Notes: generated from the sequence alone by a model not told the origin. Positions 15,327 through 25,057 are shown, counted from the whole stretch's first letter. The stretch: DNA of 63,744 bases, filler included, from Octopus bimaculoides (GCF_001194135.2; 4 parts of 4 records of this genome joined end to end with filler, not necessarily neighbours in it), one strand, 5' to 3'. Translations and numbers: made by a program.

Positions 15327-15428
15327 ATATTGAGGAAATTAAAGAGGGAGATAGGCGCTGATCGCAAATTGTTGTAAACGGAGGCCCCATTGAAAGTTAA
15401 CCTGTATATTAGAAACAGTGTAAATCAG
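15327..15428 (+). pseudogene. Copy B middle exon (102 nt, phase 1-1) with compensating indels and a nonsense codon
   Basis: tacgtag|AT ATT GAG GAA ATT...AAT TGT TGT AAA CGG AGG CCC CAT TGA AAG TTA ACC TGT...CAG TGT AAA TCA G|gttaaa. Confidence 0.7.
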
Positions 15429-15526
15429 GTTAAAAGAAAGTGATGAAGCGAATGAATGTAGCAGTTTTGATAGCAATACGATGTACCTTTATATTCAATT
15501 TTAAACGTCATACATCAATATTTTAG

Positions 15527-15615
15527 GCGGTAGGGCTCAATGCCAATATGTGCAGCTAAGTGAAAATCCTGAAGATTACTCTTATTTTAATAAGTGTGTT
15601 CAAGATAGATCTTAA
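15527..15615 (+). pseudogene. Copy B terminal exon (G)GRAQCQYVQLSENPEDYSYFNKCVQDRS* (internal deletion, Cys losses)
   Basis: ttttag|gc acceptor, homology to the A and C terminal exons, and AATAAA at ~15657 in a conserved 3' UTR. Confidence 0.75.
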
Positions 15616-17222
15616 TGAATTATATTCTATGCTTGTAAATTGCATACCAGTCACTGAATAAAATCAATAAAGAATATGCCATATTATAAGCAATAAGTTT
15701 AAGGAAAGCATAGATATACACCACTGACAGAACCGAAGAACGTATCTCTCGCATGTCAGATGCGTTTCTATATCTGTTGCATAGAAAATTCATGCCTATG
15801 ATATCAAATATTTCTAGTAACCTGAAGTCTTTATTGAGTTATCATTGTTTGATTTTGTTATTTTATTTCGATACAATTTTACCAACTGGTTCAAGACATA
15901 TCTCTATGTTGAGCACTTTTCTAATATCAAAGATATCAGTTGTATAATATACATACATACATACACACATATATATATATTAAGTGGTATTGTAATTCTT
16001 CTGAGTGTTGTCATGAGAAACATAACTGAAATTTTTACCTCGCATCGATTTTGTTACACTTCTTGTGCTAGGCGTAGTTCAACTTGGTGATATTTACAAT
16101 AATTGTACATTTATCATACACATCCAACATGAACAAATGGAAACGAAAATATCACTTTTGAAGAACAAATCAATTCAAACCACACTATAAGATAGTGAAG
16201 AAAAACCAGTGCGGGACATTTGTATAGCGGTCAAATGCAGATATTTCTCTATATATTTGTCAACATGTTGCAATAAAGTGTTGCGTGATACCATTGTGCT
16301 TCATATGGTATACGTTTTGCATCACTGGTTTAACAGTTACTGTGGATTTTCAATGAGTAGGGTAGTATATAAGATTTCTGTAAATAATTATAGAGCAGTT
16401 TGTTATTCTTAAACAATTGAAAGAAGAAAAATATATATATATTAGCTTTCTAGTTTATTGATGCCTGCCTACAGACACGCCCTGCGGGTGTGTACCTTCT
16501 CCAATACTCTCCATACGTCCTAGCAAGGCCCGCGCTGTTACGTACTATTCCAAAACCAGCTACAACGATCAGATCATTGTATAGAATATTCTTGAATCCT
16601 AATATATGCTAATAGCATATATTTACAATGAATCGGCTGTCATCCATTACCATCTGTGAACGCGATCAAATGTCCTTCTTAGTGGCGGCAGATTCAGGAT
16701 GTCCGGACTGTAGGATCATTTTCAAGTCTGTACCCTCCTCTCCTAAATTCAACTATCCACTTTGCACTGTTGATAAGGATGGAGCGCTAATCTCCTGTTG
16801 TAACCACCTTGTTAGCATAATAGTTCTTGGGGTTAAACTCTTTTTCTCCGAGTAGTTGATAGCATAACGATAACACATATTTTTTTTAAAGAGAAGTAGC
16901 TACAATTTACATTTGTAGTCTTCTCTGAACAGGTATACAGTTCTTGGATATTTTACACGTTAGATATCAATATATTTTGCAACAACTAACATGTTTCTTA
17001 TGTCACCTCTAGTAACTAATATGCCTCAAGTGACTGAACTAATGACTACTGTTACTCATCATCACTCTATCATGTGTAAGCTCACTGCTGTTCACCGAGA
17101 ATCTTGCAATATTTTCTGGTATCACAAAAACGCCGATGGCTATGGAAATTGCAGTGAATGCCAGTACATCATTGATGCGTAGACGAGATATAAATCTAAA
17201 ATTTAATATATCAAAATTTTAA

Positions 17223-17254
<32 letters not shown>

Positions 17255-18065
17255 NNNNNNNNNNNNNNNNNNNNNNNNNNNNNNNNNNNNNNNNNNNNNN
17301 NNNNNNNNNNNNNNNNNNNNNNNNNNNNNNNNNNNNNNNNNNNNNNNNNNNNNNNNNNNNNNNNNNNNNNNNNNNNNNNNNNNNNNNNNNNNNNNNNNNN
17401 NNNNNNNNNNNNNNNNNNNNNNNNNNNNNNNNNNNNNNNNNNNNNNNNNNNNNNNNNNNNNNNNNNNNNNNNNNNNNNNNNNNNNNNNNNNNNNNNNNNN
17501 NNNNNNNNNNNNNNNNNNNNNNNNNNNNNNNNNNNNNNNNNNNNNNNNNNNNNNNNNNNNNNNNNNNNNNNNNNNNNNNNNNNNNNNNNNNNNNNNNNNN
17601 NNNNNNNNNNNNNNNNNNNNNNNNNNNNNNNNNNNNNNNNNNNNNNNNNNNNNNNNNNNNNNNNNNNNNNNNNNNNNNNNNNNNNNNNNNNNNNNNNNNN
17701 NNNNNNNNNNNNNNNNNNNNNNNNNNNNNNNNNNNNNNNNNNNNNNNNNNNTATATATATATATATATGATATCAAGATGGATTAACAGTCCTTCTCGAG
17801 CTATACGTACATAAGGCCAATCACTTGGATTCTGTGGCGTATATATTGCCCGGCTGAACGGCATAGCGATTCGTACCACATACAAAAAAATACACACGTG
17901 CATATTCCTATAAGCATATGTGAAGATGCACACACACGAAATACACACACACATACATGCGTATATTTATACACACATATACATATGTGTGTGTGCGTGT
18001 GAGATAGTGTATCTACACGCGTGCGGGCGTGAATAGCTATATTTTTACACACACACACACATACG

Positions 18066-18096
<31 letters not shown>

Positions 18097-18341
18097 ACGC
18101 ACACACTCATATATATATGTAAGTGTGTGCTAGTTGTTTTCTTCATACTCAGCCTTAGTTGTATATTTCCTACGTTTTGGAATTGTAAGCGAAGTTATAA
18201 TTCTTCATCATAGTCGAAAACGGCAGAATATATTGACCGTAAAGGTGACACTTCTGACAATGAACAACGTAAGTATATTCTCAATAATTGCTCTTTCGAA
18301 GGGCGATCACGACATGTCCATTGAAATCAAGAAGTAATAAA

Positions 18342-18454
18342 CCAATCGGTATGTTTTATATTCGTATCAGCTAGAAGTATGTTTCATATATAAGTATGAT
18401 TCTTATGTAATTACATAGTTACCTACTGTAGGGCATATAAAGAAACACCTACTG
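18342..18454 (+). promoter_or_regulatory. Copy C core promoter and non-coding exon 1
   Basis: CCAAT 18342-18346, TATATAAG 18387-18394, Inr-like atAgtt with A at 18417 (30 nt after the TATA start), and donor ctg|gtaagc at 18454/18455. Confidence 0.6.
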
Positions 18455-22804: not shown

Positions 22805-22865
22805 ATGAATTTTACATTCTTTCTCATCATCTTGGGAATACTAATGATACTTGCCCTAACCGAAG
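22805..22865 (+). CDS. Copy C signal-peptide exon MNFTFFLIILGILMILALTE(G/E)
   Basis: tttacag|gttcaac ATG...ACC GAA G|gtaaga. Intact ATG, hydrophobic core, small residues at the end, canonical splice sites. Confidence 0.85.
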
Positions 22866-23039
22866 GTAAGAAGTCTATTATCACATTCGTTAAATGATTT
22901 GTTGCCCCCTATTGTAAAGACACTTACTTTGATTAATTGTGCATTCAAATCTAATTTTGGTGCAGGGTTTTATTATTGTCTGGAACCAATGTTTGAGAGA
23001 ATAGCGGCCTTATTGTATCCTAACATCCATGAACCATAC

Positions 23040-23626
23040 TCAGAAATCATATTTATTTTTTACGTCCAAATGATTTTGAACGCTGCGGAATAAATGATAA
23101 TCAGATGGGGCAATGTCAGGTGAATATGGTGGGTGGGGTAACGTTTCCCATTCAAACTGCTCCAGCTTTTGAAATGTCATCTTCGCTGTATTTGGCCGAG
23201 CATTATCCTGATGGAAGAACATCTTTCGTCTTGAAACCAAAGATGGTCGTTTTTCTTCTATCGCTAACTTAAGCCGCTCAAGCTGCTCGCAGTAGATCTC
23301 CTATGTTATCGTTTGGTTTGGGTTTAAAAGTTCAAAGTGGACTAAATCTTTCATACCCCACCAAACAGATAACAACATGAAGAACTTCTTTAGCCTGAGG
23401 TGCCAGTGTTTCTCTCTTCCCTATTCACTGTCTTCGGTGCCCTGACATTTTTGTAGAGTACATATTTCTCGTCAACAATCACTATTCAGTCAAAACAAGT
23501 TAATTCGTGAGACGTGGCCGCAAAGAAGCGCAACACTTCACATTATGCACAGAGTTCAAATTTATCATTTTTGGAAGTTTCCCCCAGATGTTTATTTTCT
23601 GGTTCTCTAAACTCAAGAGATTACAA

Positions 23627-23661
<35 letters not shown>

Positions 23662-24573
23662 AACCCTGAGTTTAAAATAATGCATGGTTCAATTTTTATA
23701 GCTCTTTAAATTCGGCCAATTTAACGAAATTTCCTTTTTTTTTTTTAGTATCCTAACATTGAACATATTTTCGTTCACAAAAAGATTTTAGACCTCTCTT
23801 TGAACTTATTTAGAAGCGTTGTTTATTGTCTTTCAGTCAAGCTACAGGCTGGAATGCATAGGCCAACATAAATTTGAGAGAATTGGGGATGCATGAAAAT
23901 ATCCAAATTTTGGGTAAAACACCTTCAAACTTGATAATCTAAAAACAAAATACAAATTTTGACATATTAAGGGCTAACATATTTGTCCTCCTCAACATTT
24001 TATGTAAACTCTGGGAAAAAATCATTTGAAAGGGGTTAAAAGGCCACGCAGAACGAATTATTCCAGATTGGGTGCCAAACATCAAAACGAAACAAAATTG
24101 GGTAAAATTGGTAGTTATTGACCCCCCCCCCAACGTGATTAAACAAGTATAGAAACAGGAAATATAAAATGGACTTAAAACCTAATAAATTTTTTGAAAT
24201 AATTGATCTTAAATATACTTCTTTTGGTATATAACTTATTTTATACAGTAAAGATTGGGTTGGGAAGGTCACGCTTATTGTCCGATCCCCATATACTGCA
24301 TTAATATTCCTCGCACTTTCCGTTGCGTTGTTGCCTTTATTGAACTCATGAAGCAAAATATTCTGCATATGCTCCTTTGTCACTTCCATTATAACTTTGA
24401 AAAAAATAACCATTAAACTCGAACTGCACTCTTCAAAACTTGCACTAAGAATAAGCACGAGGCAAAAGTACTACCTGCTTTTACAACAAGTTGATGCAAG
24501 GAGTTTATCCCGAACCCCTCCGACTTTTATTTCATCCAATTGAAAAAACTGCATTGTTTGTATGATGACTCAA
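23040..24573 (-). mobile_element. Internally deleted mariner (second family) with ~0.8 kb foreign insert, in intron 2 of copy C
   Basis: MEVTKEHMQNILLHEFNKGNNATESARNINAVYGDRTISV and FHQDNARP...HPPYSPDIAPSDYHLFRS. TIR ttgagtcatcatacaaacaatgc is related to the 36.2-37.1 kb copy. Confidence 0.9.
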
Positions 24574-24782
24574 TATTTACATTATGTCTATATCACAACG
24601 ATATATCGTTGTTTGTAAATTGCTTAATGGTTGTCATGCAAATTGTAAAATAAATTAAAAGAATTAAAATCATAAAGATTTAAAAAAATTAATATCATGA
24701 AGATTGGACTAACTGAGTTTTTGTCGTCCAAAACAACAATAAAATTGTGAATAATGGGTGAAAGACATACATAGATATATAG

Positions 24783-24829
24783 AAAATTGCGGAAAACGAA
24801 GGCCACATTGGACGTTGATCTATGTAGCA
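24783..24829 (+). CDS. Copy C middle exon, shortened: (E)NCGKRRPHWTLIYVA
   Basis: tatatag|AA AAT TGC GGA AAA CGA AGG CCA CAT TGG ACG TTG ATC TAT GTA GCA|gtaaga. Codon-aligned with copy B, with synonymous differences. Ends in phase 0, unlike B. Confidence 0.55.
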
Positions 24830-24944
24830 GTAAGAGATGAAGCGAATGATAAGTAGCTTTGATATCAATATGATGTATCTTTATATTCATTTTTTAAAAT
24901 ATCAAAATGGCATTAAGGCAACTTTTATTATGTTCTAATTTTAG

Positions 24945-25057
24945 GCGATTATTCGGCATGTCGTGCGATTTGCCAGAAACAACATCTGCCAGGTGGAAAG
25001 GGTAATGATCACGCTGCTTTTTTTCAGTGTCTCCAACAGAAATGTCAATGTATGTAA
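24945..25057 (+). CDS. Copy C terminal exon (G)DYSACRAICQKQHLPGGKGNDHAAFFQCLQQKCQCM*
   Basis: ttctaattttag|gc acceptor. Open frame to TAA 25055-25057 with CxxxC-x18-C-x4-CxC. Confidence 0.85.

What the first reader, a model, noticed from the sequence alone, without database searches (positions are those of the whole stretch)
15327..25057. Reconstructed ancestral precursor has an 8-Cys framework C-x10-C-x4-C-x7-C-x3-C-x18-C-x4-C-x-C
Seen: the B and C middle exons align codon for codon (aat tgt tgt aaa cgg agg ccc cat tga aag tta vs aat tgc gga aaa cga agg cca cat tgg acg ttg), with silent third-position changes at C, R, P and L. This pins the frame as NC.KRRPHW.L. Inference: repairing a -1/+1 indel pair in B and joining to the A/C terminal exon gives signal + DIEEIKEGD.ALIANCCKRRPHWKLTCILKQCKSG + ..xQCRxxC..HL..F..C...KCxC. 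A CxxxC paired with a C-terminal CxC is the hallmark of the CS-alpha-beta fold (invertebrate defensins, macins, scorpion toxins). The 18-residue spacer and lack of a GxC motif do not fit the canonical pattern, so this may be a distinct helical disulfide scaffold. The acidic N-terminal stretch could be a propeptide.
Basis: partly seen in the sequence, partly recalled or inferred. Interest (0 to 1): 0.7.

Follow-up and report, generated by a model that had tools for sequence, protein, structure and literature searches.

The report
Octopus secreted cysteine-rich peptide gene cluster

Summary
The quoted B and C stretches exist and align without gaps. The reading frame inferred from them does not hold.

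- **Homologues:** a profile of the window's signal and terminal exons finds only three Octopus vulgaris hypothetical proteins, in a tandem cluster on OX597816.1.
- **Exon structure:** at least six intact copies there join the phase-1 signal exon directly to one mature-peptide exon. Its 8 Cys are spaced C-x3-C-x18-C-x4-C-x-C-x3-C-x15-C-x3-C.
- **The "middle exon":** it is an intronic block, no better conserved than the intron around it. It has stops in every frame in all nine full-length copies.
- **Window copies:** they are a short subtype, 26 codons shorter. A has no ATG. B has lost its donor and two Cys. C is intact but has 5 Cys.
- **Fold:** AlphaFold2 predicts helices only (a three-helix long type, a helix-loop-helix for copy C), so not CS-alpha-beta. 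There is no Pfam, PDB or Foldseek match.
- **Evolution:** mature exons diverge much faster than introns, while the Cys stay fixed.
- **Gaps:** both N gaps lie outside coding sequence.

Function is unknown. My guess is a fast-evolving defence or venom-type peptide.

The parts
879..933 (+). Copy A signal-peptide exon (phase 1 donor). GTG stands where the paralogues have ATG, and there is a 6-nt in-frame deletion.
6694..6710 (+). Homology to B starts at 6694; LINE-like debris lies upstream.
6834..6940 (+). Copy A mature-peptide exon, short type: ...QCRQDC-x18-C-x4-C-R-stop, 4 Cys.
10413..10720 (+). Copy B homologue of the non-coding 5' exon/promoter block. The donor is lost.
13466..13526 (+). Copy B signal-peptide exon. 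AT stands where the donor GT should be.
15327..15428 (+). It is 102 nt, bounded by AG...GT, with stops in all three frames.
15527..15615 (+). Copy B mature-peptide exon, short type. It is degenerate: a 15-nt deletion and only 2 Cys left.
17255..17751 (.). Assembly gap inside a (TA)n tract, intergenic between copy B and copy C's 5' exon.
18108..18454 (+). Copy C homologue of the 5' exon. The donor CTACTG|GTAAGC is conserved with the first exon of O. vulgaris CAI9719438.1. The exon start is not defined.
18488..19263 (.). Assembly gap inside a (TA)n tract, within intron 1 of copy C.
22805..22865 (+). Copy C signal-peptide exon, intact: MNFTFFLIILGILMILALTE + G, acceptor ttacag|GTTCAAC, donor GTAAGA, phase 1.
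24783..24830 (+). Copy C remnant of the intronic block. It is shortened, has no phase-1 donor, and the orthologous acceptor reads straight into a stop.
24945..25057 (+). Copy C mature-peptide exon, short type, intact ORF: (G)DYSACRAIC-x18-C-x4-C-Q-C-M-stop, 5 Cys. It is in frame with the signal exon.
25076..25090 (+). Two AATAAA poly(A) signals in a 3' UTR that is conserved among the three window copies (75-82%) and with O. vulgaris copies (about 75-80%).

Best explanation
The window is cephalopod DNA, judged from its composition, its repeat content and its only homologues being in Octopus. I could not determine the species. It carries three tandem paralogues (A, B, C) of an Octopus-restricted, unnamed family of small secreted cysteine-rich peptides.

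**Gene structure.** The gene has a non-coding 5' exon, a signal-peptide exon (phase 1) and one mature-peptide exon.

**Intact relatives.** Intact O. vulgaris members encode a signal peptide of about 20 aa plus a cationic mature peptide of 56-65 aa. Its 8 invariant Cys are spaced C-x3-C-x18(12)-C-x4(5)-C-x-C-x3-C-x15-C-x3-C. It is predicted to be three helices. I infer that four disulfides staple them.

**Window copies.** They belong to a short subtype that lacks 26 codons. It ends at or just after the position of Cys5, which leaves a predicted helix-loop-helix with two possible disulfides.
- A has lost its start codon.
- B has lost its splice donors and two Cys.
- C keeps every signal needed for expression, but its old stop codon became a fifth, unpaired Cys.

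**Function (inferred).** The family is a fast-diversifying extracellular effector: host defence, antimicrobial or salivary/venom, less likely a pheromone. The rigid disulfide-stapled helical core is held constant and the surface residues turn over.

**Shown:** the anatomy, the homology, the absence of a coding middle exon and the rate asymmetry.
**Inferred:** secretion, disulfide pairing, the fold and the function.
For: - **Three copies:** they align at 70-80% over exons, introns and UTRs.
- **Exon coordinates and phases:**
- **Homologues:** the profile of signal plus terminal exons hits only O. vulgaris CAI9719438.1 and CAI9719436.1 among 1.84 billion proteins (E 2.5e-4 and 7.6e-4). Flanking DNA is also homologous (blastn E down to 1e-36).
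- **Intact copies:** at least six 8-Cys mature exons lie in L001/L002. Their signal exons have the same GT donor and phase, and the mature exons the same acceptor. All three annotated models splice straight into the mature exon.
- **Block in ten copies:** There is at least one stop in every frame of every full-length copy. Its Cys are not conserved. It is no more conserved than the neighbouring intron.
- **Short type:** it is 78 nt shorter, and the stop in A, B and the O. vulgaris minus-strand copy sits at the Cys5 position.
- **Rates:** in O. vulgaris, introns are 95.5-96.7% identical and mature exons 73.6-89% (p down to 7e-21), with dN/dS 0.6-1.9. In the window, the exon is 55-60% identical against 70-82% for the flanks (p about 1e-4) and dN/dS is about 1.2.
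- **AlphaFold2:** the long type gives H5-16, H23-44 and H50-59 at pLDDT 74. Copy C gives H2-14 and H23-34 at pLDDT 82.5.
- **Charge:** mature peptides are cationic, pI 8.2-9.4.
Against: - No transcript or peptide evidence was available. The only outside homologues come from one species' automatic annotation, and those models are chimeric across tandem copies.
- The profile E-values are modest.
- The AlphaFold2 models rest on a five-sequence alignment and reach only moderate confidence. The disulfide pairing was not modelled.
- There are hints that the block was once an exon:
  - It is 102 nt with AG/GT borders in several copies.
  - The O. vulgaris minus-strand copy reads 21 codons in a single frame from the conserved acceptor.
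  - B vs that copy shows a third-position excess of 4/3/10.
- DNA identity cannot tell whether the short type lost the C-terminal third or an internal segment.
- The function is a guess drawn from the evolutionary pattern alone.
Confidence: 0.75

Rival explanations
1. The ancestral gene had three coding exons (signal, middle exon with an acidic propeptide and three Cys, terminal exon). This would give an 8-Cys C-x10-C-x4-C-x7-C-x3-C-x18-C-x4-C-x-C peptide of CS-alpha-beta type.
For: - B's block has a phase-1-compatible AG and GT and is 102 nt long.
- There are four silent third-position changes between B and C in 33 nt.
- CxxxC and CxC motifs are present in copy C.
Against: - Intact homologues have no such exon.
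- TGA stands at the 'W' codon in 8 of the 9 copies that cover it, and the N-terminal Cys are not conserved.
- Every frame is closed in every full-length copy.
- The block is no more conserved than the intron.
- AlphaFold2 predicts helices only, and the CxC lies inside a helix.
- There is no Pfam defensin or toxin hit.
Confidence: 0.04
2. Weaker version of the reader's model. The block is the fossil of a once-coding propeptide exon that was silenced before the present copies radiated. It now persists as intron, perhaps as an occasional non-productive cassette exon.
For: - AG/GT borders and the 102-nt length are kept in B and in the O. vulgaris long copies.
- The O. vulgaris minus-strand copy reads DIEENNERFALTANSCKWRPR in one frame from the acceptor.
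- B vs that copy differs 4/3/10 by codon position.
Against: - The three O. vulgaris copies that keep 102 nt are at least 96% identical, so they count as about one observation.
- The shared TGA implies the stop was already present in the common ancestor of all copies seen.
- The third-position excess is absent against the long copies (5/6/4).
- No outgroup with an open exon was found.
Confidence: 0.15
3. All three window copies, C included, are dead pseudogenes of a short subtype created by a 78-nt deletion. Only the long O. vulgaris-type genes are functional.
For: - A lacks an ATG. B lacks its donors and two Cys.
- The O. vulgaris short copy has lost three Cys.
- C has an odd Cys count because its former stop mutated.
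- dN/dS is about 1.2 between A and C.
Against: - C keeps its 5' exon donor, acceptor, ATG, hydrophobic signal, GT donor, AG acceptor, open frame and poly(A) signals.
- Terminal-exon ORFs stay open in the same frame in all three copies, despite about 25-30% neutral divergence and AT-rich sequence.
- The exon diverges faster than its flanks, which simple decay does not predict.
Confidence: 0.4

Closest known systems
Octopus vulgaris hypothetical proteins CAI9719438.1, CAI9719436.1 and the neighbouring 116-aa model (P0003), cluster on OX597816.1 at 70.17-70.27 Mb
   Same: - Homologous signal exon, with the same phase and donor.
- Homologous mature-exon acceptor.
- The first four or five Cys have identical spacing (C-x3-C-x18-C-x4-C-x-C).
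- Homologous introns, intronic block, 5' exon and 3' UTR.
- Tandem arrangement.

   Different: - The window copies lack 26 codons and therefore Cys6-8.
- Two of the three copies are visibly disabled.
- Identity is only about 70-80% in non-coding DNA and 19-33% in the mature peptide.
- The O. vulgaris gene models themselves are chimeric and unnamed.
Two-disulfide helical hairpin peptides: the CS-alpha/alpha type such as scorpion kappa-hefutoxins, and plant alpha-hairpinins (from my own knowledge, not tested by homology here)
   Same: - Small secreted peptides.
- A predicted helix-loop-helix, with a Cys pair one helical turn apart on each helix.
   Different: - The second pair is CxxxxC, not CxxxC.
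- The loop is 18 residues.
- There is no sequence, Pfam, PDB or Foldseek similarity.
- The long relatives add a third helix and two more Cys pairs.
- The resemblance is very probably convergent.
Conotoxin-style gene families (from my own knowledge): conserved signal and UTRs with a hypervariable, Cys-invariant mature region
   Same: - Signal exon, introns and UTR are far better conserved than the mature exon.
- All Cys are fixed.
- The genes form tandem, lineage-specific expansions.

   Different: - There is no propeptide exon.
- There is no sequence relationship.
- No venom-gland expression has been shown.
- The predicted scaffold is helical.
CS-alpha-beta peptides (invertebrate defensins, macins, scorpion toxins)
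   Same: Both a CxxxC motif and a CxC motif are present in the peptide.
   Different: - No beta-strands are predicted.
- The CxC lies within a long helix.
- There is no GxC motif.
- The spacing does not fit.
- There are no Pfam hits.

Membership tests
CS-alpha-beta fold (defensin / scorpion-toxin type) | CxxxC on an alpha-helix, disulfide-bonded to CxC on a beta-strand | tested here: not met
   In the AlphaFold2 models the CxC (Cys34 and Cys36 of the mature peptide) sits inside helix H23-44 in the long type and H23-34 in copy C. No strand is predicted. These are predictions only, at pLDDT 74 and 82.
CS-alpha-beta fold (defensin / scorpion-toxin type) | Two- or three-stranded antiparallel beta-sheet following the helix | tested here: not met
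   DSSP on both models shows helices only.
CS-alpha-beta fold (defensin / scorpion-toxin type) | Canonical Cys spacing with a GxC motif between CxxxC and CxC | tested here: not met
The sequences show C-x3-C-x18-C-x4-C-x-C with no GxC.
CS-alpha-beta fold (defensin / scorpion-toxin type) | Sequence or profile similarity to known defensin or toxin families or solved structures | tested here: not met
   Pfam gives no relevant family at E <= 10. The PDB profile search gives 0 hits. Foldseek against the PDB has a best E of 5.
Octopus 8-Cys secreted peptide family (CAI9719438.1-like; unnamed) | Phase-1 signal-peptide exon spliced directly to a single mature-peptide exon | tested here: met
   Window exons have the same phase and homologous donor and acceptor sites. 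Copy C is in frame when joined directly.
Octopus 8-Cys secreted peptide family (CAI9719438.1-like; unnamed) | Detectable sequence homology of the coding and flanking DNA | tested here: met
   Profile E-values are 2.5e-4 and 7.6e-4 against 1.84 billion proteins. blastn of introns, UTRs and the 5' exon gives E from 1e-20 to 1e-36.
Octopus 8-Cys secreted peptide family (CAI9719438.1-like; unnamed) | Eight Cys spaced C-x3-C-x18(12)-C-x4(5)-C-x-C-x3-C-x15-C-x3-C | tested here: not met
   Window copies have 4 (A), 2 (B) and 5 (C) Cys and lack 26 codons. They are a truncated subtype, or pseudogenes, of the family.
Two-disulfide helical hairpins (CS-alpha/alpha, alpha-hairpinin type) | Helix-loop-helix fold | tested here: met
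   The copy C mature peptide gives H2-14 and H23-34 at pLDDT 82.5. This is a prediction only.
Two-disulfide helical hairpins (CS-alpha/alpha, alpha-hairpinin type) | Twin CxxxC motifs | tested here: not met
   The first pair is CxxxC. The second is CxxxxC in A, C and all the long copies.
Two-disulfide helical hairpins (CS-alpha/alpha, alpha-hairpinin type) | Disulfide connectivity C1-C4 and C2-C3 | not testable with these tools
   This needs oxidative folding and disulfide mapping, or NMR.

The most novel reading that the evidence does not exclude
The window's copies are degenerate offshoots of an undescribed, Octopus-restricted family of secreted cationic peptides. The family has a new four-disulfide three-helix scaffold with no Pfam, PDB or Foldseek counterpart, and its mature exon diversifies many times faster than its own introns. 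If so, it is a new venom, antimicrobial or chemosignal scaffold in cephalopods. The two-disulfide hairpin encoded by copy C would be a naturally minimised version of it.
Probability: 0.4. Interest if true: 0.55.

Novelty: new variant of a known kind. Interest (0 to 1): 0.33.

Why it matters
The claimed ancestral 8-Cys CS-alpha-beta precursor would have been a new scaffold built from pseudogene fragments. It is not real, so nobody should fold or synthesise it.

What survives is more modest but genuine. Octopus has a lineage-restricted tandem family of small secreted Cys-rich helical peptides, currently labelled only 'hypothetical protein'. In O. vulgaris its introns are about 96% identical while its mature exons are 74-89% identical, with every Cys fixed.

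That pattern is typical of toxins, host-defence peptides and pheromones. It makes the family a reasonable candidate for cephalopod venom or immunity work.

The locus also shows how tandem arrays mislead automatic gene models. All three O. vulgaris models are chimeras.

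Tried and rejected
- **Word-indexed protein searches.** The search with copy C's spliced product found nothing. Searches with family alignments returned only the O. vulgaris proteins.
- **Literature.** Full-text searches for peptide words (FFLIILGI, KRRPHW, HCKCRY and others) gave 0 papers. 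Keyword searches on octopus Cys-rich peptides found nothing that describes this family.
- **Family and structure libraries.** Pfam and the PDB sequence search gave no hits. Foldseek of both models against the PDB gave nothing below E = 5.
- **Non-coding RNA.** Rfam and ARAGORN on the whole window gave nothing, so the block is not a known ncRNA.
- **Species identification.** An exact look-up of the 199-aa Helitron-like ORF was not on record, so the species stays undetermined. The identification as cephalopod rests on homology to O. vulgaris only.
- **Placing the 78-nt deletion.** I compared identity to the C3-C4 region against the C7-C8 region. It was about 50% both ways, so this is unresolved. 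Cys spacing favours loss of the C-terminal third.
- **Structure prediction.** I reran it with five.
- **A-to-I editing.** I considered editing of the conserved UGA to UGG as a rescue of the block. I rejected it because two or more further stops and frame shifts remain in every copy.

Full report
**What the window is, and the gap test**

The piece is AT-rich eukaryotic DNA full of microsatellites and transposon debris. A self-comparison shows three tandem copies, all on the + strand, of one small gene unit.
- Copy A: signal exon 879-933, terminal exon 6834-6940.
- Copy B: signal exon 13466-13526, terminal exon 15527-15615.
- Copy C: signal exon 22805-22865, terminal exon 24945-25057.

The copies are 70-80% identical across exons, introns and 3' UTRs.

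A further duplicated block (10413-10683 and 18108-18394) lies upstream of B and C. It is homologous to the first exon of an O. vulgaris model. The donor CTACTG|GTAAGC is conserved at 18454|18455.

The two N gaps in the finding's range are both embedded in (TA)n tracts.
- 17255-17751 lies between B's poly(A) signals and C's 5' exon.
- 18488-19263 lies in C's intron 1, 33 nt after the donor.

No reading frame crosses either gap. The exon order (5' exon, signal exon, mature exon) is the same for B and C. That is consistent with correct scaffolding, though it does not prove it.

**The observation**

The two quoted strings are at 15367-15399 (B) and 24785-24817 (C).

Six of the 8 fall on third positions. 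I estimate p about 0.02 for one frame, or about 0.06 after allowing for three frames. Over the 57-nt stretch the counts are 5/7/9, which shows no periodicity.

The level of identity is the same as in the surrounding intron. That is expected, because the whole unit was duplicated.

**State of the three copies**
- The signal exons end in phase 1, and the terminal exons start with two bases that complete that codon.
- Copy C reads in frame when the two exons are joined directly. That gives MNFTFFLIILGILMILALTE-G-DYSACRAICQKQHLPGGKGNDHAAFFQCLQQKCQCM.
- A has GTG in place of the start codon.
- B has AT in place of the signal-exon donor, has lost the donor of its 5' exon, carries a 15-nt deletion, and keeps only two Cys in its terminal exon.
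- The 'middle exon' is complete only in B (15327-15428, 102 nt, AG...GT). There it has stops in all three frames.
- In C the block is shortened and has no phase-1 donor. In A only its last 17 nt remain.

**Outside evidence**

A profile of the window's signal plus terminal exons was searched by HMMER against 1.84 billion representative proteins. It found two proteins only (E 2.5e-4 and 7.6e-4). Both are Octopus vulgaris 'hypothetical predicted protein' entries, CAI9719438.1 and CAI9719436.1. A third, P0003, came from the word-indexed search.

Their loci (L001-L003) together cover OX597816.1 from 70.17 to 70.27 Mb. They share the following with the window, at 72-88% identity:
- introns;
- the 5' exon;
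- the intronic block;
- the 3' UTR.

The cluster contains at least six intact mature exons of 56-65 codons. All have 8 Cys spaced C-x3-C-x18-C-x4(5)-C-x-C-x3-C-x15-C-x3-C. One variant has a 12-residue first loop.

The signal exons there have the same phase and GT donor, and the mature exons the same AG acceptor. All three annotated models enter the mature exon directly from an upstream exon (...ALTE|AGEVEC...). None uses the block.

The models are otherwise chimeric across neighbouring copies.

**The block in ten copies**

I aligned the block from A, B, C and seven O. vulgaris copies.
Only window C has TGG, so the stop is ancestral.
- Cys1 is Ser in one copy.
- Cys3 is Tyr or Arg in three copies.
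- The Cys of 'KQCKSG' is Arg in the O. vulgaris long copies.
- Every full-length copy has at least one stop in every frame.

Among O. vulgaris copies the block is 90-97% identical, against 93-100% for most of the rest of the intron. So it is not under extra constraint.

There are residual hints of a former exon. I therefore keep a 'fossil exon' rival at about 0.15.
- The 102-nt length and the AG/GT borders are kept in several copies.
- The O. vulgaris minus-strand copy reads 21 codons in one frame from the acceptor.
- B vs that copy differs 4/3/10 by codon position.

**Short versus long type**

The window copies, and one degenerate minus-strand O. vulgaris copy (L001 about 33320-32800), are 78 nt (26 codons) shorter than the long type. 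They run straight into the shared 3' UTR.

The Cys spacing matches Cys1-Cys4 of the long type in A, and Cys1-Cys5 in C. The stop of A, B and the O. vulgaris short copy sits where Cys5 is. In C that codon is TGT, which adds 'CM' and an unpaired fifth Cys.

DNA identity cannot decide whether the C-terminal third or an internal segment was lost.

**Rates**

| Comparison | Introns / flanks | Mature exon | p | dN/dS |
|---|---|---|---|---|
| O. vulgaris copies | 95.5-96.7% identical | 73.6-89% identical | 1e-5 to 7e-21 | 0.6-1.9 |
| Window copies | 70-82% identical | 55-60% identical | about 1e-4 to 3e-3 | about 1.2 (A vs C) |

All Cys are invariant in the O. vulgaris copies.

This is the pattern of a diversifying secreted effector. 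Alternatively, gene conversion may have homogenised the introns while exon diversity was kept.

**Fold and comparison with known families**
- AlphaFold2 on the long type (five-sequence alignment) gives three helices, H5-16, H23-44 and H50-59, at pLDDT 74.
- AlphaFold2 on the copy C mature peptide gives a helix-loop-helix, H2-14 and H23-34, at pLDDT 82.5.
- No strand is predicted, and the CxC lies inside a helix. CS-alpha-beta therefore fails each feature I could test.
- Pfam, the PDB sequence search and Foldseek against the PDB give nothing.
- The mature peptides are cationic.
- The nearest analogy, from my own knowledge, is the disulfide-stapled helical hairpin (CS-alpha/alpha, alpha-hairpinins). 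The second Cys pair here is CxxxxC, though, and there is no sign of homology.

**Likely mechanism**

I infer a secreted peptide whose signal peptide is cleaved around ...ALT-EG. It would fold into a helical core locked by paired Cys, with a variable surface that engages an external target such as a microbe, a prey receptor or a conspecific receptor.

Which of these applies cannot be decided without expression data. I lean towards host defence or a salivary effector, with low confidence.

For the window itself, A and B are pseudogenes. C may be a functional two-disulfide hairpin with a free Cys, or a third pseudogene. I put it at roughly even odds.

**Limits**
- No transcript data were available.
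- Homologues come from one species only.
- The species of the window was not determined.

Noticed in passing
L001 10364-12700, L001 24124-26500, L002 10001-12360 (O. vulgaris): Tandem copies have introns 95.5-96.7% identical, but mature exons only 73.6-89% identical with all 8 Cys fixed (p down to 7e-21). Either selection on the exon is strongly diversifying, or gene conversion is confined to the introns.
   Followed up: partly
L001-L003 (O. vulgaris models CAI9719438.1, CAI9719436.1, P0003): All three annotated gene models are chimeras across neighbouring tandem copies. One reads an upstream signal exon out of frame. One ends in the wrong frame of another copy's mature exon. One replaces the signal exon with an unrelated exon 7 kb upstream.
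   Followed up: partly
window 132-262 and 1392-1522: An exact 131-nt direct duplicate (100% identity) flanks copy A's signal exon. It could be transposon ends or an assembly artefact.
   Followed up: no
window 21118-22140 (+); 23057-23375 and 24036-24576 (-): There are two degenerate mariner/Mos1-like transposons. One, with many stops, lies in the intron upstream of copy C's signal exon. The other lies inside C's intron between the signal and mature exons; its ORF at 24036-24458(-) hits Pfam HTH_48 at E 2e-10. A related copy is in O. vulgaris L002 at 59675-60724.
   Followed up: partly
window 2415-2564, 10883-11045, 12400-12542: A SINE-like repeat family (73-83% among copies) is also present in O. 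vulgaris L001 at 33692-33959 (up to 97%). ARAGORN finds no tRNA and Rfam gives no hit.
   Followed up: partly
window 2670-3605 and 5690-6656: Reverse-transcriptase-like LINE debris lies inside copy A's intron. It abuts the truncated block, and a 257-nt N gap at 3614-3870 lies between its two parts. It is about 80% identical to O. vulgaris L002 48842-50724.
   Followed up: no
window 9315-9932: A 205-aa open frame carries a CCSGGKVKLP motif that looks Helitron-N-terminal-like by eye. It has no Pfam hit and no exact match in the gene index.
   Followed up: partly
window 18236-18270 and 10527-10580: Inside the duplicated 5' block there is a second conserved donor-like site (ACAATGAACAAC|GTAAGT in C's copy, lost in B's). 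It is also present in O. vulgaris and may be an alternative 5' exon end.
   Followed up: no
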